A stretch of 63,709 nt of DNA, filler included, from Octopus bimaculoides (GCF_001194135.2; 8 parts of 8 records of this genome joined end to end with filler, not necessarily neighbours in it), one strand, 5' to 3'. Positions 328-15,398 are shown, counted from the first letter of the whole stretch. Numbers and translations: made by a program. Notes: generated by a model not told the origin, from the sequence alone.

Positions 328-1400
328 TTTATTCAATATTGTAAAACTCAATATTGACTCCCCAGAATGAATTGCAATTTTGCCACAATGGTAAGAAGTG
401 TTACTTGCTCTATCTGATGCAAAAGAATTAAAGTGCGTAGATCTGCGTAGAGCGAAGTTATCCGGGATAATATTCTTATCCAGCTATACAAACTGTGACG
501 AAGATTTCTAATATTTGCTCGCCCAGCAGCAAGTTGAAACAAAAATAGTCGTCATGACCTCATTTTACGATATTTAATCAGTAGTAAGTAGTTTATTCAA
601 TATTGTAAAACTCAGTATTTACTCCCCAGAATGAATTGGGATTTCTATTTTGCCACAATGGTATGCAGCGTTGCTTGACCTATCTGATGTAAAAGAATTA
701 AAGTGCGTAGATCAGCGTAGAGCGAAGTTATCCGGGATAATATTCTTTTATCTTCATAGCTATACTGACTTTGACGAAGATCGTTCACCCAGTTGTTGTA
801 ATAAGTAAAAATAGTGCCTTCAAAATTTTTCCCAGTCATTTTAGCATATTACCTCAATAATTTACGAATGGTCGGAGATTTCTGGAACCTACGGTAAATC
901 CTTTAACACAACCGATTGGAACCGACATTTTGTGTGAAAATGCCAATTGCGGTGTTGATAGAGTGTGTCATTGTACTTACACCTTAAACCTGAAAGCTGA
1001 TGATACTGTCCAAATTGTAATGACAAGCTTAGGGAGAGGGAATAGTGATTCGCACCCCATGCACCTGCATGGGCATTCATTTTATGTTGTTAAGATGGGA
1101 TTTCCGAAATACAATGAAACATCGGCTAAAGGTAGATAATTTCTCAAGAATGAGTTTGTTTTCACATCATTTAACGATATTTTATGGAGAAGTAAGTAAT
1201 ATATTCCATGAAAAAAAAAGTCGATATTATTTTCCCGCGGTGACATAGGATGTTTATTTTTTCACCATTGTGTGAGGCGTTACTTTATCTAATACAAAAG
1301 GATTGAAGTGGGTAGATCTGCATAGAGAAAAGTTATTGTACATAACATGCTTTAATACAGCCATATTGCTTGCAATGAATAATGTTTCTATGCCCGCCTA
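328..1400 (+). repeat. Local ~265-bp repeat: copies at ~328-545, ~592-800 and a diverged copy at ~1255-1400
   Basis: Shared blocks tttattcaatattgtaaaactca, ttttgccacaatggta and aaaagaattaaagtgcgtagatc.gcgtagagcgaagttatccgggataatattctt. Confidence 0.8.
861..1125 (+). pseudogene. 265-bp duplicate of oxidase exon segment 5243-5507 (includes HPMHLHGH)
   Basis: Matches 5243-5507 at a constant offset of 4382 with no mismatch seen by eye. Both flanks are non-homologous. Confidence 0.93.
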
Positions 1401-2945: not shown

Positions 2946-3017
<72 letters not shown>

Positions 3018-3090
3018 CATACATATATATATTTATATATATGCATACATACATACATATATATATACTACATACATATATATATTTAAA
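2926..3090. repeat. (AT)n microsatellite, representative of many simple repeats: (CA)n, (AAT)n, (ATC)n, (GTA)n, (GATA)n, (ATGT)n
   Basis: Direct reading. Other examples: 7915-7990, 14069-14136, 31826-31888, 32110-32330, 33735-33805, 36300-36360. Confidence 0.95.
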
Positions 3091-3400
3091 CATTCCAACG
3101 TCTTTGTCTTTATTTATTATCTAGTGTGTTAAACGACTATAAAGGAGATGACACTGTTGTTTCCGGTAGATTGAACAATTTCATAGAGGTGAAACAGCTT
3201 GCATTGTTTGATTAATGTTTCGGAAATATCTCTTGACTGTATGACACTCTAAATTTAGAAGGTTGCTATCTTTATTTACCAATATTCTAAGTAGTAAATG
3301 TTTTTATGAAACACCAGACATTTGGTTCCATATGCAATCACGGCACAGCCACTAGGCTGCATATCTAACTTACCTATGTATTGTCAATCACTGCAATATT

Positions 3401-3413
3401 CTGTAAGGTAAGC
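3401..3413 (+). promoter_or_regulatory. Candidate splice donor of an upstream 5'UTR exon of the oxidase gene
   Basis: AAG|GTAAGC at 3407/3408, about 500 nt upstream of the 3908 acceptor. No transcript evidence. Confidence 0.35.
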
Positions 3414-3931
3414 ATGACAAGTACTATAAAACGAAAGAGTTAGAACCTGATCACGTATTCAAACTGTCCTTGTTAACAGATATACTAGTATCCTCTTGAC
3501 CACACTGTGACACACAGTCACACGTACTGGATGAATTACTTCAACCGGTGTTTCTGGTTTGACAGACATGCTTGAGATATTCCCGGCGTTAAGTTCTGAG
3601 GGTAGTTTACTTTGTCACCAACTGTTGAAAAGGGCGTCTTGTAAACTATTAAGTACAGACAGACAGGTGACCGTAACCAGCAGTTGTCCAAAAATTCCTG
3701 ATAGGAAGGTGTTCCTACAGAAACGTCCAACTAACCAAAACAATATTGATTTCCCTGTCGTCTACCTGTAACACAAAGTTTTCTCTTCATTTCTTCTCTT
3801 TAACTTGTTTGTATCCTTCGGTCTTTAAAACCTATAAACATTTCATGATTTATTAGATAGTCCTTGATGATTTTATTGTTTCTTATAATTATATTTTATG
3901 ATTTCAGATCTCTGCACACACTGGTTCAACA

Positions 3932-5900
3932 ATGGTTCACTTCAACGTAATTGTATTCCTCCTGGGTCTCTTATCACCATTAGTTTATTCTCATGGTTGT
4001 CGTATGGAAGACGACGAGTGTGAGTTTAAGCTGGTAATTTCCTATCAATTAACGATGGTAGTCAATCATGCCTTGGTAAAACCCTACAATGGAAAACTCT
4101 ACAAACATGACGTCACTAATTTTACGGGTGCTCAACCGATACCAACTGAGGAAGTTATTACAATGGATGGTTTCTCTGAGTCAGTGAAGGTGATTGCAGT
4201 TAATGGCACAGTTCCAGGACCAACAATAGAAGTTTATAAGGGACAAAGAGTCATCATTGAAGTAGAAAACGAATTATTTTCAGAAGGTACGACAGTACAT
4301 TGGCACGGCATTCATCAAAAAGGAACACCTCATATGGATGGCGTGCCTTGGGTTACACAATGCCCTATTCTACCTGGTCAATCGTTCAGATATGAATTTA
4401 ATATTACACAAACTGGAACTTATTGGTACCATTCTCATCTAGGGACACAGCGTAACATGGGACTATTTGGTGCTTTTATAATACACGAAAAAACACAACC
4501 TAAAATGAAAGAACATTTGATGTTAATAACAGAATACAATCATAACTGGGACGCCGATGTGAGTCTCATAAAACCACGTTTGGGATATTATTTTGATGGT
4601 AAAATGATTGGACGGACGAAATCTCTAGATGGAGCATTTTTTTCTCCTTTAAACGTCGATTCGGCGCTTGTGAATGGTCGGGGCCGTTATTATGATGAGT
4701 CAGGGAATCACAATGGGGCTCCCTTAGCTATCTTTGACGTAGAATCGGGAAAACATTATCGTTTTAGAGTGATCGCTGCAGGGGCTCTGTACCCGTTTGA
4801 AGTGTCTGTTGATGGTCACCAGATGACAGTCGTTGCCTCTGATGGTTATGAACTGAATCCAACACTTGTTGATTATTTTATCATCAACCCGGGCGAGAGA
4901 TTTGACTTCACGCTACATACAAATAAGAATATCGGGAATTACTGGATCCGTGGAAAGACGCTACAAATACATAAAAACAATACATTTGAAGCAATTCTTC
5001 GATATAAAGGTGCACCGGACGAAGACCCCAACTCCACAGTTTCTGACTGCGTTCAACAGAAGAACTGCATCTTACTTAACTGTCCCTTTCTTTATTATCC
5101 TGAGAAAAGTAAGAAACGATGTTTACAATTCGATGACTTGGAGTCGGCTAGCTCAACTCAAGCACCCTCATTCCGGTCTGGAAAGTTTGAGGAATATTTT
5201 TTAAATTTTGCTTTTTTTGGTGTACCTGGAAACATGCATTCGTTTACGAATGGTCGGAGATTTCTGGAACCTACGGTAAATCCTTTAACACAACCGATTG
5301 GAACCGACATTTTGTGTGAAAATGCCAATTGCGGTGTTGATAGAGTGTGTCATTGTACTTACACCTTAAACCTGAAAGCTGATGATACTGTCCAAATTGT
5401 AATGACAAGCTTAGGGAGAGGGAATAGTGATTCGCACCCCATGCACCTGCATGGGCATTCATTTTATGTTGTTAAGATGGGATTTCCGAAATACAATGAA
5501 ACATCGGGAAAAATTATAGCAAATACTAAAGATATTGATTGTAGAGGTGACCCGAAAAAGAATTATTGTAACGATGCGACTTGGTCAAACAGCAACTGGG
5601 AGGGAGACAATATCCCCGGAATAAAGTTAGACAAGGCTCCTCTAAAGGATACAATTATGGTCCCTAAAGGTGGATACGTTGTAGTGAGAATAGTTGCAGA
5701 CAACCCTGGATTATGGTTGATGCACTGCCATATTGAATTACACAGTATGGATGGAATGGCTCTTGTTTTTAACGAATCTTTCGCTCGTTTACCAGAAATA
5801 CCGGACAACTTGCCTAAGTGTCACAGCTTCAAGAAAGGAGTTTATAACAAAAGAGACGATATTGGAAAAGATGACGACAAACATAAAAATTATAATGGCG
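3932..5900 (+). CDS. Laccase-like multicopper oxidase, main coding exon (signal peptide plus 3 cupredoxin domains)
   Basis: Signal-peptide-like MVHFNVIVFLLGLLSPLVYSHG. Four Cu motifs: HWHG, GTYWYHSH, HPMHLHGH, HCHIELHSMDGM (Met axial T1 ligand). Acceptor tttcag| at 3907/3908, ATG in acaATGG context, donor GGCG|gtaagg at 5900/5901. The ORF track continues to 6172 only by reading into the intron. Confidence 0.95.
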
Positions 5901-6194
5901 GTAAGGAATGTTTTTTACTTGTTCTATCTTTTCTTACGAGTTTCAGCTCTTACTTTACATATATATATATTCATCACAGATTTGCTGATGTTTTTAAGAG
6001 TGCAGGACATACGGACTATCCTAAAACGGTTGATGGGGGTGAGAACAGTGCTGTTCTTGTGAACGAGATGTATTGTAACATGTTGCATGTTTCAAAAGAG
6101 CGGGAGAGATGCCTAAAGAGAACGAGAGGAAGAGAGACAGAGAGAGAGGGAGGTAGAGAGGAGGGAGAGTGAAGGAGGGAAGGATGGAGGGATG

Positions 6195-6226
<32 letters not shown>

Positions 6227-6539
6227 TGTGAAGAAATATTTTCTATGGCATTCAGAGCTAGCACTGAAAGTTTTGCCTGTGTAGACAATGCGATCGAAAA
6301 TAGGAAAATTAAGCAATGGTTATATTTGCATATTTTGAGAAGAGTTAGTGCTCTTTTATCAGCACCACATCCAATCCATCTACTATCCACGAACGCATTG
6401 TTTTTACGACCTCTAAGTTTAGCTGTGTAACACTGTTGGAGAGCCCAGTTTATATATTAAACACATTCCTGGCAACTGGTACGTAAATATTGATTGCTAG
6501 CAAGAACACAGTATTCCACCCTGCCAATGTAATAAACTA

Positions 6540-6812
6540 CCAACCGCAAATCAGTGTTGCTCTTACAAGACCACGTATTGCCCGAGTCAGTAAAGGAAAG
6601 ATTATCGCTCTAAATATGGAAGTTTAGTTTCATCGTTCTTACTTTCCTGACGTTGTTCCCTCTGACTATCATCTTTGCAAATCGTTGCAACATTATCTAT
6701 AGGTTAAACAGTTTATTAATTAGGAAGAGTTAAAAAATGATACCGCGTCTTTCTTTACTTCGAGTCCTGATTAATTTTACACTGAGGATCAACAGTTTGC
6801 CAAACAGATGCG
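6540..6812 (+). mobile_element. Degenerate mariner transposase C-terminus (intronic)
   Basis: Remnants of LLQD..., WEV...Y.PDVVPSDYHL..SLQH.L and F.S....FY..GI..LP.RW. Confidence 0.75.
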
Positions 6813-6814
6813 AT

Positions 6815-7720
6815 TACTTCCCACTTTGCGTAACCCCTGGCCTCTAAATACCTAATCCACAAGAACGCAGCTATTGCAGACAATGCCAAATCCAATATCC
6901 TAATAGCGGACTCATCACCGAGTGATGAATGTGTCCCGCATGTTCGACTCAACAGAATTGGAAAGTTACATACAACATTTCAACCGCCGCATGCGATTCT
7001 CTGGTTACAGCCAAAGGGACAGGATTATAGTGTACAAAGGAGCCAGGGCTAAGTACAAGGCCATCATAGCGATAGATGTAAATGAGATTTACTCGCTAGA
7101 CAGGAGTGAATCTGGGAACAGTGAAGAAAGGATAAAGAAGAAGGTAGATAAGGCCAACTCATGATATGACAACAAAAAATGCCAGAGTGTCATATTCGTT
7201 GATGCCACCCCTGGTGCCGAACTAGTATATCTTTTTAGAAAAGCGTTAGATAAGATAAATCTACGGGTTAACGTAGTAGAAAGGCCAGGAACCCCCATAA
7301 AATCCCTGATCCGTAGAACATATCCATTTGATAGGTTTCCATGTACGAAGAACAACTGTGTAATTTGTTAGATGAATTCACAGGTTAGCCTTAAGATTAG
7401 GAATGTTGTCTATAGCTTACCATGTACTGAAGGACAACACACATTGGAGAGACGGCAAGTAGCATAGGGGAGCGGATAGGTATACACTGGCGGGAAATCA
7501 AAGAGGAGTAAAGTGCGTCAGTGCTCTACCAAGGTGCTCAATTAGAACACAGAAGCTCGGTTAATAACATAGAGGTTAAGGTATTATCCACGCATAGAAC
7601 AGACATGACACTTAGACAAATTACAGAAGCCACACACATCGTAATAGAGAGACCGAGCCTCAAGAGAAGGCACAAATGGAACAATAACACTCCCTATTAC
7701 TACACTACGCAGCACGACGA
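6815..7720 (+). mobile_element. 5'-truncated Penelope-like element (RT thumb plus GIY-YIG endonuclease), intronic
   Basis: LASKYLIHKNAAIA..., VIFVDATPGAELVYLFRKAL...VVERPGTPIKSL, then C..C...NVVYSLPC...H.GET. Homologous to 47760-48600. Confidence 0.8.
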
Positions 7721-7931
7721 CTAAAGATAGAGGGAGGAAAAAGACAGAAATGCAAACAATATAATACACAAACCCATATATATATATATATACACATACA
7801 CAAGAGACACACATACACATATTTATGATGAAATATAAGAAATAAAGATAAGTAAATAAATGAAAGAAAGGCTATATAACGGACACGGATACAAACAATA
7901 TAGTAGGCAAAGTCACACACACACACACACA

Positions 7932-7994
<63 letters not shown>

Positions 7995-8682
7995 CACACA
8001 TACAAGTAGACAGACACGCGTAATATACGCACGCATGCACACGCACACACGCACAGATACAGACGCAAGCGTATGCGCAGATAAGAATACACACCATAGA
8101 AAGACAGAATGAACTAATGAGAACAGGATGGAAGAGTCATGGAATGGAAGAGTCGCTGAAGAGGTCACAGGTGTGTTACGAAAGATTTCCAGGCAATGGA
8201 CATACGATAAAATAAGTACAATAATATACATATGGAGGACAAATATGTAGTGTGCGTGTGTTTATTTGGCATGAAAAATATGACCATCCCGAAATATAAC
8301 AATATCAAGTAAGTAGATCATTGTATTCTTGTTGTTATGGTAAATGTGTCGATTCCTGTTTCTAATATTTCAAGATTGAAATGAGCGAGGTTTAGTTATT
8401 TTACATCCATTACGCCCACATTGTTGTTGTAGCTGTCGTGGTGGTTGTGGTTGCGGTGGTGGTGGTGGTGGTGGTGGTTGTATTTGTTAGTGTTGCCCAT
8501 CTCTCTCTCCCATCTCTCTCTCCCTCTCTCTCTCTCTGATTGTATATGTCTGAATGTATGTGTACACACATATGCACACACATATTCACATTTCGGATGT
8601 GTTTCCAGGTTGTGCCGATGCATGATGTTCACTCGTTCATGCATGCACAGTTTGCTAGCACCGTCGAATTTACAACTAGAAT

Positions 8683-8741
8683 ATCATACCGATGAAGGAA
8701 ATGGAGTGTTATCGTTCCTAATCCAGGAATGCGTCTATGAT
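8683..8741 (+). ncRNA. Degenerate type I hammerhead remnant
   Basis: 6-bp helix I AUCAUA/UAUGAU flanks CCGAUGA-A...GGAAUGCGUC, which is 2 changes from GAAACGCGUC. Confidence 0.45.
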
Positions 8742-9954
8742 TAACTTCGACTGGTTAGTTTTCATTGTTTTTCTTCTTGTTTTGCCTTTGTGAGTTACAA
8801 GTAATGCTATCTGTTGGAGTCTCAGCTTTTTAGCTGCTATTTCTGAACTTCGGTATGTGGTGAAGCAACTATTTGCTGATCCCTTAATTATGTTTATAAA
8901 TGTATAAGAACTTTTAAATAAGTTCTCCACCGATAATGGTGTTTACATACCAAAGGGCTTGGTAAAATTATTAATTATTAATTTATTAATAAATTAATAA
9001 ATTGATAAACTTTTACCCTTTTAATTGNNNNNNNNNNNNNNNNNNNNNNNNNNNNNNNNNNNNNNNNNNNNNNNNNNNNNNNNNNNNNNNNNNNNNNNNN
9101 NNNNNNNNNNNNNNNNNNNNNNNNNNNNNNNNNNNNNNNNNNNNNNNNNNNNNNNNNNNNNNNNNNNNNNNNNNNNNNNNNNNNNNNNNNNNNNNNNNNN
9201 NNNNNNNNNNNNNNNNNNNNNNNNNNNNNNNNNNNNNNNNNNNNNNNNNNNNNNNNNNNNNNNNNNNNNNNNNNNNNNNNNNNNNNNNNNNNNNNNNNNN
9301 NNNNNNNNNNNNNNNNNNNNNNNNNNNNNNNNNNNNNNNNNNNNNNNNNNNNNNNNNNNNNNNNNNNNNNNNNNNNNNNNNNNNNNNNNNNNNNNNNNNN
9401 NNNNNNNNNNNNNNNNNNNNNNNNNNNNNNNNNNNNNNNNNNNNNNNNNNNNNNNNNNNNNNNNNNNNNNNNNNNNNNNNNNNNNNNNNNNNNNNNNNNN
9501 NNNNNNNNNNNNNNNNNNNNNNNNNNNNNNNNNNNNNNNNNNNNNNNNNNNNNNNNNNNNNNNNNNNNNNNNNNNNNNNNNNNNNNNNNNNNNNNNNNNN
9601 NNNNNNNNNNNNNNNNNNNNNNNNNNNNNNNNNNNNNNNNNNNNNNNNNNNNNNNNNNNNNNNNNNNNNNNNNNNNNNNNNNNNNNNNNNNNNNNNNNNN
9701 NNNNNNNNNNNNNNNNNNNNNNNNNNNNNNNNNNNNNNNNNNNNNNNNNNNNNNNNNNNNNNNNNNNNNNNNNNNNNNNNNNNNNNNNNNNNNNNNNNNN
9801 NNNNNNNNNNNNNNNNNNNNNNNNNNNNNNNNNNNNNNNNNNNNNNNNNNNNNNNNNNNNNNNNNNNNNNNNNNNNNNNNNNNNNNNNNNNNNNNNNNNN
9901 NNNNNNNNNNNNNNNNNNNNNNNNNNNNNNNNNNNNNNNNNNNNNNNNNNNNNN

Positions 9955-9985
<31 letters not shown>

Positions 9986-9991
9986 TTACGT

Positions 9992-10210
9992 GTGTGTCTT
10001 TGTATTTGTGTTTATCCCCGACTACCGCTTGACAACCGGACCTGGTGGGCTTACGTTCAAGTCCGGCTAATGTGACCGATAGCATAAGTACCAGGCTTTG
10101 AAAGGAAAAAGTACTAGGGTCGATTCATTCGAGTAAAAAAATATTCAGTGCAGTGCCCCAGCATGGCCGTAGTCTAGTGACTGAAACAAGTGAAAAATTA
10201 AAGATAAAAG
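9992..10210 (+). mobile_element. SINE-associated repeat, family B (other copies at ~26640-26850 and ~57195-57400)
   Basis: Shared cgcttgacaacc...ggggtcgatt...ctccagcatggccg...tgactgaaacaa motifs across three copies. Confidence 0.8.
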
Positions 10211-10333
10211 ACCGTACATATACGTCTATATTTGGTGAGTGAAGCTTCTTACATGCAAAATAGAACTGCTACATGTGTACGATGTAGAAAAAGAGAAAAA
10301 GCTAGAAGTAAATGCCAAAAGAACTAATCAATA

Positions 10334-10790
10334 AATACAGTAATCACTCGCCATATCACGATTCACTTATCACGCCCTCAGTACAGTAATCACTCATTAT
10401 ATCACCGTTCACTTATCGCGCCCTCAGTACAGTAATCACTCCCCATATCATGGTTCACCTATCACGCCCTCAGTACAGTAATGTTTCATTATTGCGCCCT
10501 CAATACAGTAATGTCTCGCCATATCGCGGTTCAGCTATCGCACCCCCAGTACAATAATGTCTCGCAATATCGCGGTTCACCTATCACGCCATCAGTACAG
10601 TAATGTCTCGCCATATCGTGGTTCACCTATCACGCCCTCAGTACAGTAATCACTCGCCATATCGCGGGTTTCTGCGGCCGGTAAGTATTTATATTTTCTT
10701 AGATTTTAATTATTTCTTTAGTAAAATAAGCATTTTCACGCTTAAAAATGAATAAATTGATGGATAAAAATACAGTACAGTACTGCATTA
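10334..10790 (+). mobile_element. Tigger/pogo-like transposon end amplified into a ~46-bp minisatellite (~7 units, 10334-10667)
   Basis: Unit cagtaatcactcgccatatcgcggttcacctatcacgccctcagta. The TA-CAGT start resembles pogo/Tigger TIRs, and the last unit continues into unique sequence. Confidence 0.65.
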
Positions 10791-10944
10791 TATAACACAT
10801 TAATTAAAATATATTACAAGAAAATGTGTCGTGAACCGTAGATGAGTAAACAAAGAATCGCATATACCGTATGGAAAACGAAACTCGAGAGGCGAGTGTG
10901 GTATTGTTTTGCATTTATAATAAAATAAATATATACAAATTATA

Positions 10945-11466
10945 CAGGGTGTTCACAAAGTTTGGGTACATGGGGATTAACACATACTTTAAGAAATTAT
11001 TGCTTCTTATATTTAATTGTTTATGTTATGATTTTATTTACTCCATGCACCCACATGGGCATTGACACATACTTTAAGAAATTATTATTTCTTATATTTA
11101 ATTGTTTATGTTATGATTTTATTTACTCCATGTACCCAGACCTTGTGGACACCCTGTAGAAAGGATTTNNNNNNNNNNCACAAAGTTTGGGTACATGGGG
11201 ATTAACACATACTTTAAGAAATTATTGCTTCTTATATTTAATTGTTTATGTTATGATTTTATTTACTCCATGCACCCACATGGGCATTGACACATACTTT
11301 AAGAAATTATTATTTCTTATATTTAATTGTTTATGTTATGATTTTATTTACTCCATGTGCCCACATGGGGATTAACACATACTTTAAGAAATTATTATTT
11401 CTTATATTTAATTGTTTATGTTATGATTTTATTTACTCCATGTACCCAGACCTTGTGGACACCCTG
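10945..11466. mobile_element. Tc1/mariner-type MITE (10945-11156) plus a second copy (11179-11466)
   Basis: TIRs cagggtgttcacaaagtttgggtacatgg / ccatgtacccagaccttgtggacaccctg, TA flanks and internal tandem duplication. The second copy starts at a 10-N gap and may be an assembly duplication. Confidence 0.8.
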
Positions 11467-11611
11467 TAGAAAGGATTTAAAAAAATATTGAGTACGGCGG
11501 GATTTGGGGGTGTAACACTTGCGATAGCGAGGGATGACGTAATATGTGAGCAAGTTGCTGTCTATATATCTACCTAATGAACTCCATATTGTTTTTTCTT
11601 TATCATTGCAG

Positions 11612-11733
11612 ATATAACCGACCCAACAGTAAAAGTGGCACTCGGAGTTCTAATCGGAATTGTCTGCGTCCTGGTTATTCTTGTTATTGTTCTTGTTTAT
11701 GTTTTGATTGGTGTGCTGAAACAGAAGAAATGA
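11612..11733 (+). CDS. Terminal coding exon of the multicopper oxidase: transmembrane helix plus short basic tail
   Basis: Pyrimidine tract gttttttctttatcattgcag| ending at 11611. Phase-1 join gives (G|AT)=D-ITDPTVKVALGVLIGIVCVLVILVIVLVYVLIGVLKQKK-stop (TGA 11731-11733): a long hydrophobic run followed by KQKK. Confidence 0.85.
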
Positions 11734-12073
11734 CATTCGAAAACCTCTTGAAAGCAACACGTCTGAAGATAGAAGTGAAGGAAAGTTCAGTGGCATGGTA
11801 GTGGTAGTGGTCGCGGTGGTGATAGTTACGAGGGATGGGAGGATTGTTTAATGCAATAGTGCTTTTAGTGGTGGCTGCGCTGGTGGGGGGGGGGTGATGG
11901 TGTCGGTGGTTGTTGTTTGTGTTGTGTGGGGAGGAGTGTTAATGCTGGAGGAGGAGGTGAAATAACATAGAATACATTATGGTTTATGCAATGCTTAGTC
12001 CAAGTGTTCGAGTGGGGTTTGGTAACTAATGCATGAAGGATGTAGCTGTTGGTGTACATATAGCACAGGTATA

Positions 12074-13084
12074 TAATGACTTGTAGGCACACGGCATTTC
12101 GTTATGCAACCATGATATACAACGAAGTGCATTAAACGTTTTCATAAGACAATAGCGTGTACTTCTGTGTTAGCAGTGCACTTAAATCCCGTGTTAAGGT
12201 CATCTCTACAGATTTGCTAGAGAAATTATAACCAACACTGATTATTTTGTTACGACGTTTTGTATCCGAGATTCCAGATGTAAACAAACAGTGAAATCGA
12301 GGACGAAAAGATAGTTAATGAGCGTATATACCATAAAGAGCGTATAAACTGATGTTGTTTCGATGTTTCCTTTCCGATGCGCCAGATGTGACCAACAGTA
12401 AGATCTAGGATGAAAAAATGTATAATGGGCGTATATACTATATTTCGGGAGTTTTTGCACTTTCATCAGCACCCATCTTACACATTAATCATCCATGAAC
12501 TCATTGCTTAAATAACCACGAAATACAGCTGTGTAACGTTACTGGATATACCAGTTTACTCATTAAACACACTTCTGGAAAGTTGGTGTGCAAATATTAA
12601 TGACTTGTAGGCGCACGGTATTTCGTTATGCTACCACAAAATACTATAAGTATATTAAACGTTTTTATAAGTCAATACCGTGGACTACTGTGTTAGCAGT
12701 TGGAATGCGCTTAATAGGCAAATTGGTGTATTCAATATCGTTATATCGCTATATGTAGTGGTTATATAAGCAATGAATTCGTGGATGGTTAATGGGTTAG
12801 ATGGGTGCACACGAAGGAGCAAAACTCCCGAAATATGGCATATACGCCCATTATACAATTTTTCTTCCTCGATCTTACTGTTGATTACATCTGGCGTATC
12901 GGAAAGGAAACGTCGTAACAAGATCAGTGCTGGCTCTAACTTCTATCGAAGATCTATAGAGATGACATTAACACAGGATTTCAGAACATTGCTAGTACAG
13001 TAGTACATGGTATTGAATAATACAATCGTTTAATATACTTTGTAATAATCGCATAACGAAATATTATGTCCCTATACATCATTA
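12074..13084. repeat. Large diverged inverted repeat (arms ~12074-12519 and ~12758-13084)
   Basis: atttcgttatgc/gcataacgaaat; tgtataatgggcgtatat...tatttcgggagtttt / aaaactcccgaaatat...atatacgcccattataca; cattgctt..ataaccac / gtggttat..aagcaatg. Related fragment at ~21110-21220. Confidence 0.75.
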
Positions 13085-13247
13085 ATACACGCACATACAT
13101 ACGCACACAGACTATATTGTTTTTTAAATTGCTAAATTATTACTTTTAATTAAGTTCATCGTAGGAGCTGCTTAACTATATTATCAATTTTCCAGTAGCT
13201 TTTAAAGGTAGGCTATGTTTGCATGGGCTTTAAACCAATTCTATTTA

Positions 13248-13430
13248 CTAGCGGGACCCGTGAATATTTCACGGAATTAATAGTAAATTTATTGGGTTAT
13301 TCCTGAAAACTTTATCGAAAAATCCTGAAAGCGTAACCTGTGGTGTGTCTGTATCAAAAGATAGTCGCTCATCTGCTATTCATTGGAAAGTGAAGGAAAT
13401 TGGAATAAGATGATTATTTAATGCACTTTT
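13248..13430 (-). mobile_element. Helitron 3' terminus (non-autonomous fragment)
   Basis: Minus strand: hairpin CCGTGAA-ata-TTCACGG, then GTCCCG, then CTAG|T. The 5' extent is uncertain. Confidence 0.65.
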
Positions 13431-13514
13431 TATATATATATATTATATGCTTTATATGCCCAATTTCATAGACTTAATACACAACTCTCATAAAATAAAC
13501 ACTCACTCCTATTT

Positions 13515-14076
13515 GTCTATTTTTCCCATAAAGAGAAAAAAGTGTAGAAATTGTCAAAGTACAAAGATCTCGAAGTTGAAGTATTCAAAATGTGGGGAAT
13601 GACAGTGAAAACAATAATAAGTAGAGCATTGGGCATCATATAAAAACATAAATACGTAGAAGCTATACTTGGATCCTCAACACTATACACTATCTAAAAA
13701 TAGCCCTGCTAGAAACAGCCCACATACCACGCAAAACACCATCAATTCAATAAGACAACCTTAACAAAACAACCCACAAACACATGGCACATCTTATACA
13801 GCAATTATCCAGTGAAATTAACTTCCACTAGTGAGCTGGATAACCAGCGCATTACAACTTAACACACAATACAAACAATAATAGAACAAAAGACTGCACC
13901 ACACTTCAAGAGAAAAAAACTGATGCAATGCAATACCGGGAAGAATTTGCACGCTCCCAGCAACAGTAGAAGAACACCTAATGTTGCATACACCCCGGCA
14001 ACACGGAGTAGCAGGTGATGCAGTAGAAATTTTCTTGAAACTACCAGATGAACAGCTATGTAATAATAATATTAAT

Positions 14077-14137
<61 letters not shown>

Positions 14138-15020
14138 TGAATCCTAGAAACACTAGCCATGAACAAGGTAGCACCCATAATCATGAAATATATAAAACAT
14201 TCCATGAATAAGTGACAAACAGTGCTATAGCCCCAGACAAATAGGGACTCATAAAAAACCAAAAGCATCCCCATTAGAAGAGGAATATTCCAGGGAGACA
14301 CGCTCACTCCACTCTTTTTCTGCTTGGCACTGACACCTTTATCTGACATGCTAAACAGAACTGGATGTGGATACAAATGTTATGGTAAAACAATCCAAAA
14401 TCTCTTGTGTGTGGATGATTTAAAACTATGCTGCAAATCATAAACTGCTGGAAACATTATTACAGACGGTTCATGAATTTACGAAAGAAATAAACATGAA
14501 ATTTGGTTTAGAAACATTTGCCAAAGCAACCTTGAAAAGAGGAAAACTAGTTAAGAGTAACAACATCACACTAGATAAAGGAAATGAAATAAGAGAATTA
14601 GACCAAAGCCAGGCATGCAAATACTTAGGAATCAATGAACTAGGTACAACACACACAAATGAACGAGAAGATAAAAAAGGAATACTATAGTTGAATAAGA
14701 TTAATATTGAAAACAGAGCTCAATGCGAAAAACAAGATAATAGGTATCAACACTCAAGCCGTCCCAGTTATGTTACAGCTAAAATATTCTTAACTGGACT
14801 TTAAATGAACTATTCAAAATAGATAGGAAAACAAGAAAAATAATAGCAGGATTTAGGATGTACCACCCAAAATCTAACATACAAAGAGTATATATATACA
14901 ATGTATCGAAGGTGGTAGAGGCCTTATACAACTAGAAAACTATTACAAAATAACCACCATAGGATTACAGAATTACCTACTTCAGAAACAAGGAAAACTG
15001 ATACAAATAGTATTGAACAA
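13515..15020 (+). mobile_element. R4/Dong-like non-LTR retrotransposon remnants: RLE C-terminus (13515-13760), then RT region (13860-15020)
   Basis: KYKDLEVEV.KMWG...GALG; IFQGDTLTPLFFCLAL (~14285); VDDLKL (14411); MKFGLE; CKYLGI. Contains stops and frameshifts. Confidence 0.85.
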
Positions 15021-15027
15021 TACTATG

Positions 15028-15079
15028 CTGATGAGCGGAGTCTAGATTAATTGTAGTAATCGCGAAATGTCGATACATA
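15028..15079 (+). ncRNA. Hammerhead core lacking helix I
   Basis: CUGAUGA-GCG...CGC-GAA-AUGU-cgau-ACAU-A. No flanking helix I complementarity. Confidence 0.4.
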
Positions 15080-15398
15080 GTTGAGTTATTTAAAAGAAAG
15101 TTGGTCTTCTTCTGTTAGTTCTTTTCCTCGCATTCGGTACTAAATGTGTTTATTTTGGGAAGTCCAGTGTNNNNNNNNNNNNNNNNNNNNNNNNNNNNNN
15201 NNNNNNNNNNNNNNNNNNNNNNNNNNNNNNNNNNNNNNNNNNNNNNNNNNNNNNNNNNNNNNNNNNNNNNATACGCATATACATATACATACATGTATAC
15301 AAACACATACGTAAACACAGGCATGCACATACATACATACATAAAAATATATATATATAAGAAAAAGAACTCAAATGTTTTCATATATACATACATAC

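What the first reader, a model, noticed from the sequence alone, without database searches (positions are those of the whole stretch)
3932..11733. Hidden exon makes the laccase a membrane-anchored (type I) multicopper oxidase
The ORF track gives a 746-aa protein with a junk tail. The sequence shows a GT donor at 5901 and a phase-matched exon 5.7 kb downstream encoding a long hydrophobic helix plus KQKK-stop. The predicted product is 696 aa: signal peptide, three cupredoxin domains with all four Cu motifs, a Met axial ligand, at least 6 N-glycosylation sequons (NFT, NGT, NIT, NST, NET, NES) and a TM anchor. Established: most animal laccases are secreted, while anchored three-domain MCOs such as yeast Fet3p are ferroxidases. 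Inference: a cell-surface ferroxidase, ascorbate oxidase or catechol oxidase, possibly for metal handling, pigmentation or sclerotization.
Basis: partly seen in the sequence, partly recalled or inferred. Interest (0 to 1): 0.72.

Follow-up and report, generated by a model that had tools for sequence, protein, structure and literature searches.

The report
Octopus membrane-anchored laccase gene, already annotated

Summary
RNA contigs from two runs and 35 raw RNA-seq reads join window 5900 to 11612.

It is not new. This exact protein is RefSeq XP_014788213.1/XP_014788214.1 (LOC106882155, Octopus bimaculoides; UniProt A0A0L8FNW0, "Laccase"). The window is identical to chromosome CM046617.1 of GCA_001194135.2.

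The design, one large catalytic exon plus a terminal membrane-anchor exon, recurs in the O. sinensis orthologue, in a paralogue about 15 kb downstream, and in cuttlefish and abalone genes. Of the 120 closest homologues, 68 carry a C-terminal hydrophobic helix. Insect MCO1 is also described as membrane-tethered.

Both assembly gaps lie inside the intron and cannot affect the reading frame. DNA continuity across them could not be shown.

The substrate is unknown. The Fe(II)-binding residues of yeast Fet3p are not conserved, which argues against a Fet3-type ferroxidase.

Seen in passing: a 265-nt exact copy of part of the coding exon in intron 1, and dense A-to-G RNA editing in the 3'UTR.

The parts
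3908..5900 (+). Exon 2. It holds 24 nt of 5'UTR, the start codon at 3932 and codons 1-656 plus the first base of codon 657. These encode the signal peptide (about residues 1-20), the three cupredoxin domains and most of the acidic/basic linker.
   Evidence: ORF and Pfam domains. An X2 RNA contig diverges upstream of 3908, after the AG at 3906-3907. RNA contigs end exactly at 5900.
5901..11611 (+). Phase-1 intron, GT...AG. Its nominal length of 5711 nt includes the assembly gaps 9028-9954 and 11169-11178. It is rich in microsatellites, interspersed repeats and an 85-nt tandem array at 10968-11448.
   Evidence: Junction contigs and reads. There is no raw RNA coverage at 5960-6120. Repeat depths and the absence of bridging DNA unitigs. 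Tandem array.
5901..6172 (+). The read-through 'junk tail' of the mechanical 746-aa ORF. It is intronic and not part of the mature mRNA.
   Evidence: Depth is 0 in X23 and X24 and 2.5 against 64.6 in X2.
11612..11733 (+). Coding part of exon 3: (D)ITDPTVK, the hydrophobic helix VALGVLIGIVCVLVILVIVLVYVLIGVL, KQKK and the stop codon (TGA 11731-11733).
   Evidence: The AlphaFold2 helix spans 661-695 with block pLDDT 82-91. The same exon is present in the orthologue and the paralogue.
11734..13515 (+). 3'UTR of exon 3, with AATAAA at 13494. It contains long inverted repeats (12122-12571 against 12706-13043) and about 37 A-to-G RNA/DNA differences between 12172 and 13002. The end coordinate is approximate.
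   Evidence: RNA contigs run to 13468-13499. Poly(A) signal. Inverted repeats. A>G table.
861..1125 (+). Exact 265-nt same-strand copy of CDS 5243-5507, encoding FTNGRR...HPMHLHGH...NETS. It lies in intron 1 and is not part of the mature mRNA as far as seen.
   Evidence: DNA unitigs cross both junctions in X25 and X27, and X16 also shows the flanked copy.

Best explanation
This is the Octopus bimaculoides gene LOC106882155, one of a tandem family of laccase-like three-domain multicopper oxidases.

The gene has at least three exons:
- a 5'UTR exon about 7.4 kb upstream, outside this piece;
- one large exon (3908-5900) encoding the signal peptide and the whole catalytic ectodomain;
- a terminal exon (11612 to about 13510) encoding a single hydrophobic helix, a four-residue basic tail (KQKK) and a long 3'UTR.

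Splicing at 5900/11612 is essentially constitutive (shown).

Inferred mechanism: the signal peptide sends the protein into the ER. The copper-loaded, N-glycosylated ectodomain faces the lumen or cell exterior. The C-terminal helix, with its positive residues on the cytosolic side, holds the enzyme on the membrane in type I orientation. A roughly 25-residue disordered, charged linker connects the two.

The enzyme takes single electrons from a small reducing substrate at the type-1 copper (His502, Cys599, His604, axial Met609). It passes them to the trinuclear cluster, where O2 is reduced to water. The most likely substrates are o-/p-diphenols, aromatic amines or ascorbate, as for other low-potential Met-type laccase-like oxidases. 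Fe(II) by a Fet3-type site is less likely.

The dibasic KR site in the linker allows shedding of a soluble form. That is speculation.
For: Junction: RNA contigs in two runs and 35 raw reads join 5900 to 11612, and the intron start has no raw-read coverage.

Identity: the exact product is XP_014788213.1/XP_014788214.1, also UniProt A0A0L8FNW0. The window is identical to CM046617.1.

Domains and ligands: three Pfam Cu-oxidase domains. H123, H125, H167, H169, H502, H505, H507, H598, C599, H600, H604 and M609 are invariant in a 50-sequence family alignment.

Structure: the AlphaFold2 model has mean pLDDT 86.7 and pTM 0.84, a linker at 632-656 below 50, and a helix at 661-695. Foldseek top hits are ascorbate oxidase 1AOZ, termite laccase 8R7I, and fungal and plant laccases, all at E of 1e-42 or lower.

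Anchor conserved on its own terminal exon:
- the O. sinensis orthologue has the same donor G|gtaaggaatg;
- paralogue LOC106881493 lies about 15 kb downstream;
- Sepia pharaonis;
- Haliotis rufescens, where 32 residues follow the helix, which shows a true membrane-spanning segment.

Of the 120 closest homologues, 68 have a C-terminal hydrophobic helix, most followed by 15-50 residues.

Exon 1: its end...GAAAATAAAT|gtgagt, is at L001 2574.
Against: No experiment or predictor for topology, signal-peptide cleavage or GPI anchoring could be run here. In octopus the cytosolic tail is only 4-5 residues, so a GPI-attachment signal cannot be excluded.

Substrate preference is not predictable from fold. 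Ascorbate oxidase, laccases and Fet3p all match with similar scores. The NCBIfam ascorbate-oxidase and laccase models score far below their cut-offs (255 against 615 bits and 226 against 559 bits).

The Fet3p residue comparison rests on a sequence alignment that is uncertain in loop regions.

DNA continuity across the intronic gaps is unproven.
Confidence: 0.8

Rival explanations
1. The C-terminal hydrophobic segment is a GPI-attachment signal. It would be cleaved and replaced by a lipid anchor, as is predicted for insect MCO1, rather than serving as a permanent transmembrane helix.
For: The cytosolic tail is only four residues (KQKK), and small residues (N, G, D) lie upstream of the helix. 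Insect MCO1 has a C-terminal hydrophobic region and is predicted to be GPI-anchored (PMC4593997).
Against: The hydrophobic run is about 30 residues and ends in a basic cluster, which suits a stop-transfer anchor. Homologues in gastropods, bivalves and annelids have 15-50 residues after the helix, so the ancestral state is a true membrane span.
Confidence: 0.15
2. The membrane form is a precursor. The ectodomain is shed by cleavage in the disordered charged linker (for example at the KR site) to give a soluble haemolymph or secreted laccase, which is the working enzyme.
For: The linker at 632-656 is predicted to be disordered (pLDDT below 50) and contains NKRDD. Mollusc laccase-like activity has been measured mainly in plasma, and it rises after trypsin treatment in Biomphalaria (PMC4722754).
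Against: There is no direct evidence for cleavage. The linker sequence is poorly conserved across the family (consensus). The plasma activity in other molluscs could come from the homologues that lack an anchor, which are 52 of the 120.
Confidence: 0.2
3. It is a cell-surface ferroxidase working like yeast Fet3p or vertebrate hephaestin. This is one of the reader's functional options.
For: The topology matches Fet3p: signal peptide, three cupredoxin domains and a C-terminal transmembrane helix. This paralogue and its O. sinensis orthologue have an Asp (D500) two residues before the T1 ligand His502, where the family consensus has Trp or Phe.
Against: Fet3p E185, D283, D409 and Y354 align to Y253, N350, G495 and F426. 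These positions are non-acidic throughout the family. Fet3p ranks only 31st among structural matches. Fet3p has a Leu at the axial position, whereas this protein has Met (alignment).
Confidence: 0.08
4. The 746-aa read-through ORF is a genuine alternative secreted isoform produced by intron retention.
For: One low-depth X2 contig (2.5 against 64.6) reads from 5885 to 6038 across the donor.
Against: Raw-read depth is 0 at 5960-6120 in two deep runs. The tail is low-complexity sequence that runs into a GA microsatellite. The level fits unspliced pre-mRNA.
Confidence: 0.03

Closest known systems
RefSeq LOC106882155 (XP_014788213.1 / XP_014788214.1; UniProt A0A0L8FNW0 'Laccase'), Octopus bimaculoides
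   Same: Identical 696-aa sequence and identical genomic locus.
   Different: Nothing differs. The database entry carries no functional characterisation.
Lophotrochozoan laccase-like multicopper oxidases with a C-terminal membrane helix (O. sinensis XP_036355362.1, O. bimaculoides LOC106881493, and Sepia, Haliotis, bivalve, annelid and nemertean homologues)
   Same: Identity is 43-84%. The copper ligands, the axial Met and many cysteines are invariant. The catalytic part sits in one large exon and the anchor in a terminal exon.
   Different: Octopus members have a cytosolic tail of only 4-8 residues, against 15-50 elsewhere. This gene and its O. sinensis orthologue have GNSD-SHP where the family has GKGW/F-SHP, just before the first T1 His.
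Insect multicopper oxidase-1 (MCO1)
   Same: It is an animal laccase-like three-domain oxidase with a signal peptide and a C-terminal hydrophobic tether. It was first described as a ferroxidase and later found to be mainly an ascorbate oxidase (PMC4593997).
   Different: In MCO1 the hydrophobic region is short, lies at the extreme C-terminus and is predicted to be a GPI signal. Orthology with the mollusc family was not tested here because no insect sequences were aligned.
Yeast Fet3p (PDB 1ZPU)
   Same: Type I membrane topology and a three-cupredoxin fold.
   Different: About 22% identity. The Fe(II)-binding residues E185, D283 and D409 are not conserved, and the axial ligand is Leu in Fet3p against Met here.
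Termite blue laccase BP76 (PDB 8R7I) and zucchini ascorbate oxidase (PDB 1AOZ)
   Same: These are the closest solved structures by sequence (8R7I, E 3.5e-69) and by fold (1AOZ E 3.3e-47; 8R7I E 5.1e-46 with TM-score 0.68).
   Different: The solved chains are 628 and 552 residues. Sequence identity is only 23-27%.

Membership tests
Three-domain multicopper oxidase (laccase-like) | Three cupredoxin domains (Pfam Cu-oxidase_3, Cu-oxidase, Cu-oxidase_2) | tested here: met
   E-values are 9e-44, 6e-32 and 3e-34, all far above the gathering scores. The AlphaFold2 model matches laccases and ascorbate oxidase at E of 1e-42 or lower.
Three-domain multicopper oxidase (laccase-like) | Ten His and one Cys copper ligands in the four motifs HxH, HxH, HxxHxH and HCHxxxH | tested here: met
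   H123/H125, H167/H169, H502/H505/H507 and H598/C599/H600/H604 are present and invariant in 50 homologues.
Laccase in the strict sense (EC 1.10.3.2) | Oxidation of p-diphenols or aromatic amines by the purified enzyme | not testable with these tools
   This needs an enzyme assay. The NCBIfam plant laccase model TIGR03389 scores 226 bits against a cut-off of 559.
L-ascorbate oxidase (EC 1.10.3.3) | Match to the equivalog model, and ascorbate-specific activity | tested here: not met
   TIGR03388 scores 255 bits against a cut-off of 615. 1AOZ is the top fold match but is barely separated from the laccases. Activity was not tested.
Fet3p-type ferroxidase | Acidic Fe(II)-binding residues at the T1 site (Fet3p E185, D283, D409) | tested here: not met
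   They align to Y253, N350 and G495. Anchoring on the L(I/V)NG motif instead puts E185 opposite L240. The alignment is uncertain in loops (Fet3p sequence verified against 1ZPU).
Fet3p-type ferroxidase | Type I membrane anchor C-terminal to domain 3 | tested here: met
   A hydrophobic helix spans about 663-692, after the HCH motif.
Type I single-pass membrane protein | Cleavable N-terminal signal peptide, plus one C-terminal hydrophobic helix of at least 19 residues with positive charges on the cytosolic side | tested here: inconclusive
   Hydropathy at 1-19 is 1.95, and at 663-692 it reaches 3.6, followed by KQKK. The model shows a helix there. Homologues have real cytosolic tails. No SignalP, TMHMM or GPI predictor and no experiment was available.
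Mollusc membrane-anchored laccase-like gene family | Catalytic ectodomain in one large exon and the anchor in a separate terminal exon | tested here: met
   This gene; paralogue; O. sinensis orthologue; Sepia; Haliotis.

The most novel reading that the evidence does not exclude
This paralogue and its O. sinensis orthologue have replaced the family's conserved aromatic residue next to the first T1 histidine (GKGW/F-SHP) with an acidic one (GNSD-SHP, D500). If D500 lines the substrate site, this member of the octopus tandem family may have shifted towards cationic substrates, such as Fe(II) or protonated catecholamines. That would make it a functionally diverged cell-surface oxidase and not just another phenoloxidase. 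More broadly, a membrane-anchored laccase-like oxidase may be the ancestral state in protostomes, shared with insect MCO1.
Probability: 0.1. Interest if true: 0.4.

Novelty: already known. Interest (0 to 1): 0.15.

Why it matters
It matters little beyond correct annotation. The gene model was already public and the architecture is the common one in molluscs.

The residual value lies in two points. Many lophotrochozoan 'laccases' are membrane-anchored, whereas the immunology papers read here treat mollusc and squid laccase as a soluble or extracellular enzyme. Their substrates also remain untested.

Tried and rejected
The junction was therefore shown from the two sides separately.
- Bridging the assembly gaps with DNA unitigs from four runs failed. 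The gap edges are high-copy repeats and no contig crosses them.
- I tried to discriminate laccase, ascorbate oxidase and ferroxidase by fold search and by NCBIfam models. The fold scores are nearly equal and all models fall below their cut-offs.
- The literature searches found no paper on a membrane-anchored mollusc or cephalopod laccase. They returned only activity studies and the Euprymna laccase-3 work. A search on 'BP76' found nothing useful, and Peng et al. 2015 is not held.
- Rfam found nothing in the window.
- The scripting machine was lost. As a result, no family-wide phylogeny, no residue-distance analysis of the model and no systematic exon mapping of further homologues was done.
- The idea that the 861-1125 copy is an assembly artefact was rejected, because junction unitigs exist in independent DNA runs.


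Full report
**What is in the sequence.** The mechanical ORF 3932-6172 (+ strand, 746 aa) carries the three Pfam multicopper-oxidase domains: Cu-oxidase_3, Cu-oxidase and Cu-oxidase_2. At 5900/5901 the sequence reads AATGGCG|GTAAGGAATG. At 11611/11612 it reads TTTATCATTGCAG|ATATAACCGACCC. Codon 657 begins at 5900, so the exon ends in phase 1, and G + AT gives Asp. The joined CDS is 2091 nt, giving 696 aa and a TGA stop at 11731-11733. The added 40 residues are DITDPTVK, then VALGVLIGIVCVLVILVIVLVYVLIGVL, then KQKK.

**Is the junction used?** Yes.
- A 1505-nt RNA contig of run X1 lies with positions 1-718 on 5183-5900 and 718-1499 on 11611-12392.
- A 1402-nt contig of run X2, from another study, lies with positions 1-1119 on 4782-5900 and 1119-1402 on 11611-11894. 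Both have no mismatches.
- In raw RNA-seq, 17 reads (X23) and 18 reads (X24) leave 5900 and continue with ATATAACCGACCCAACAGTAAAAGTGGCAC, the first 30 bases at 11612, with agreement 1.0. Coverage of 5960-6120 is zero in both runs.
- The only read-through is one X2 contig at depth 2.5 against 64.6, which is consistent with pre-mRNA.

The 746-aa 'junk tail' is therefore intron.

**The assembly gaps.** Both N runs (9028-9954 and 11169-11178) lie inside the intron, so they cannot affect the reading frame. Unitigs from four genomic runs do not cross the large gap, because its edges are microsatellite and interspersed repeat with depths of 1e5-1e6. The 10-N gap sits inside an 85-nt tandem array at 10968-11448. 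DNA continuity is therefore unproven, and the intron length of 5711 nt is nominal. The spliced RNA is what links the two exons. The window is base-for-base identical, gaps included, to GCA_001194135.2 chromosome CM046617.1, at about 49.113-49.131 Mb.

**Rest of the gene.** An X2 contig that reaches 3908 carries an upstream sequence ending ...AGTTTATAGAAAAAAAGGAAGAAAATAAAT. That sequence lies at L001 2545-2574 and is followed by GTGAGT. This is about 7.4 kb upstream of the ATG, beyond the gap that bounds this piece. So there is a 5'UTR exon outside the window, and exon 2 starts at 3908, after the AG at 3906-3907. The 3'UTR runs to about 13,510, with AATAAA at 13494 and RNA contigs ending at 13468-13499.

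**Is it new?** No. The exact 696-aa sequence is in the public collection as XP_014788213.1 and XP_014788214.1 ('uncharacterized protein LOC106882155' / 'laccase-like', Octopus bimaculoides) and as UniProt A0A0L8FNW0 'Laccase'. The read-through 746-aa sequence is not in the collection.

**Is the architecture unusual?** No.
- The closest relatives are octopus paralogues and orthologues of 698-729 aa that end in the same kind of helix plus a short basic tail...VLKQRK...VTKNKK...VRKQKN.
- Of the 120 best homologues (molluscs, the annelid Owenia, nemerteans), 68 have a segment with mean hydropathy above 1.8 after the HCH motif. It is usually followed by 15-50 further residues.
- Paralogue LOC106881493 lies about 15 kb downstream on the same chromosome. 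It has the same two coding exons, donor G|gtaaggg and acceptor ...ctttacag.
- Reads from that paralogue cross-map to the signal-peptide region (3935-4046) and to the start of the anchor exon at roughly ten-fold higher depth.
- The O. sinensis orthologue has the identical donor (aatggcg|gtaaggaatg) and an anchor exon.
- In Sepia pharaonis and Haliotis rufescens the catalytic part is likewise one ORF of more than 680 codons, and the helix is in a separate terminal exon. In Haliotis the helix is followed by a 32-residue tail.
- Insect MCO1 is described as having a signal peptide and a C-terminal transmembrane region that is predicted to be GPI-anchored (PMC4593997).

**What it is and how it probably works.**
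- The copper ligands and Met609 are invariant in a 50-sequence alignment, together with about a dozen cysteines.
- The AlphaFold2 model has mean pLDDT 86.7 and pTM 0.84. It shows a confident three-domain core, a low-confidence linker (632-656) and a helix at 661-695.
- Foldseek finds zucchini ascorbate oxidase (1AOZ), the termite blue laccase BP76 (8R7I, the best TM-score normalised to the query, 0.68), fungal and maize laccases, and Fet3p at rank 31. All have similar scores.
- The shown facts therefore support a glycosylated, copper-containing ectodomain tethered by a C-terminal helix.
- Type I orientation follows from the signal peptide and the basic residues after the helix. It is inferred, not tested. 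A GPI signal remains possible because the octopus tail is so short, but the long tails in other molluscs argue that the segment is a true membrane span.

**Substrate.**
- The Fet3p sequence was verified against PDB 1ZPU and aligned with 19 family members.
- Its Fe(II) site residues E185, D283, D409 and Y354 fall opposite Y253, N350, G495 and F426, and these positions are non-acidic in every family member.
- The alignment is weak around E185. Anchoring on the L(I/V)NG motif puts Leu240 there, which is also not acidic.
- Plant ascorbate-oxidase and laccase equivalog models score far below their cut-offs.
- A Fet3-type ferroxidase is therefore disfavoured. A phenol, arylamine or ascorbate oxidase is the best guess, by analogy with Met-type laccase-like oxidases and with the laccase-type activity measured in mollusc haemolymph (PMC4722754).
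- One peculiarity is worth noting. This gene and its O. sinensis orthologue have GNSD-SHP before His502, where the family has GKGW/F-SHP. Whether Asp500 touches the substrate site could not be measured.

**Seen in passing.**
1. Window 861-1125 is an exact 265-nt, same-strand copy of CDS 5243-5507, which includes the HPMHLHGH motif. It lies in intron 1. Genomic unitigs cross both junctions in independent runs, and the shared segment has about 1.7 times the flank depth. It is therefore real and not a mis-assembly.
2. The 3'UTR shows about 37 A-to-G RNA/DNA differences between 12172 and 13002 in four RNA runs. They lie exactly within long inverted repeats at 12122-12571 and 12706-13043. This is the expected signature of ADAR editing of a double-stranded UTR in a coleoid cephalopod.
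3. Run X23 shows a 2-nt deletion in an A5 run at 4973 in 8 of 16 reads.

**Verdict.** The structural interpretation is right but already annotated and typical of the family. The functional suggestions remain untested, and the ferroxidase option is weakened. Interest is low.

Noticed in passing
window 861-1125 (copy of 5243-5507): An exact 265-nt same-strand copy of an internal piece of the coding exon, encoding FTNGRR...HPMHLHGH...NETS, sits in intron 1, 2.8 kb upstream of exon 2. Genomic unitigs cross both junctions (754-890 and 1096-1162) in runs X25 and X27, and X16 shows the flanked copy. The shared segment has about 1.7 times the flank depth. It looks like a very recent templated insertion into a repeat copy. 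No sign was seen that it is spliced into mRNA.
   Followed up: partly
window 12172-13002 (3'UTR); inverted repeats 12122-12571 / 12706-13043: About 37 A-to-G differences between RNA and genome appear in four RNA runs, many at 30-100% of reads. They lie inside long inverted repeats that can form a hairpin of roughly 450 bp. This is the signature of ADAR A-to-I editing. No comparable editing was seen in the coding exon: the only candidate is one synonymous site, 4633, in one run.
   Followed up: partly
window 3935-4057 and 11619-11656: Reads and contigs from the paralogue LOC106881493 cross-map here at roughly ten-fold higher depth. Their loose ends encode LYQKILVQP and DKGDKNGAGN. In the libraries examined, the neighbouring paralogue is the dominant family member.
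   Followed up: partly
window 4973: A 2-nt deletion in an A5 run of the coding exon appears in 8 of 16 reads of run X23 (three start positions) and in none of X24. It is either a frameshift allele in that animal or a library artefact.
   Followed up: no
window 10968-11448: An 85-nt tandem array (with a higher-order period of 225 nt) just upstream of the acceptor contains the 10-N gap. Its copy number is therefore uncertain.
   Followed up: no
window 13537-15100: Low-level RNA coverage continues past the AATAAA at 13494 in X1, X23 and X24 but not in X2. There is a second AATAAA at 14489. This could be a longer 3'UTR isoform or unrelated transcription.
   Followed up: no
L003 (O. sinensis VCDQ01003116.1) about 4226-4260: In the orthologue's assembly the main exon is split into two overlapping ORFs (3001-4260 and 4226-5152). 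This frameshift explains the 'LOW QUALITY PROTEIN' label of XP_036355362.1.
   Followed up: no
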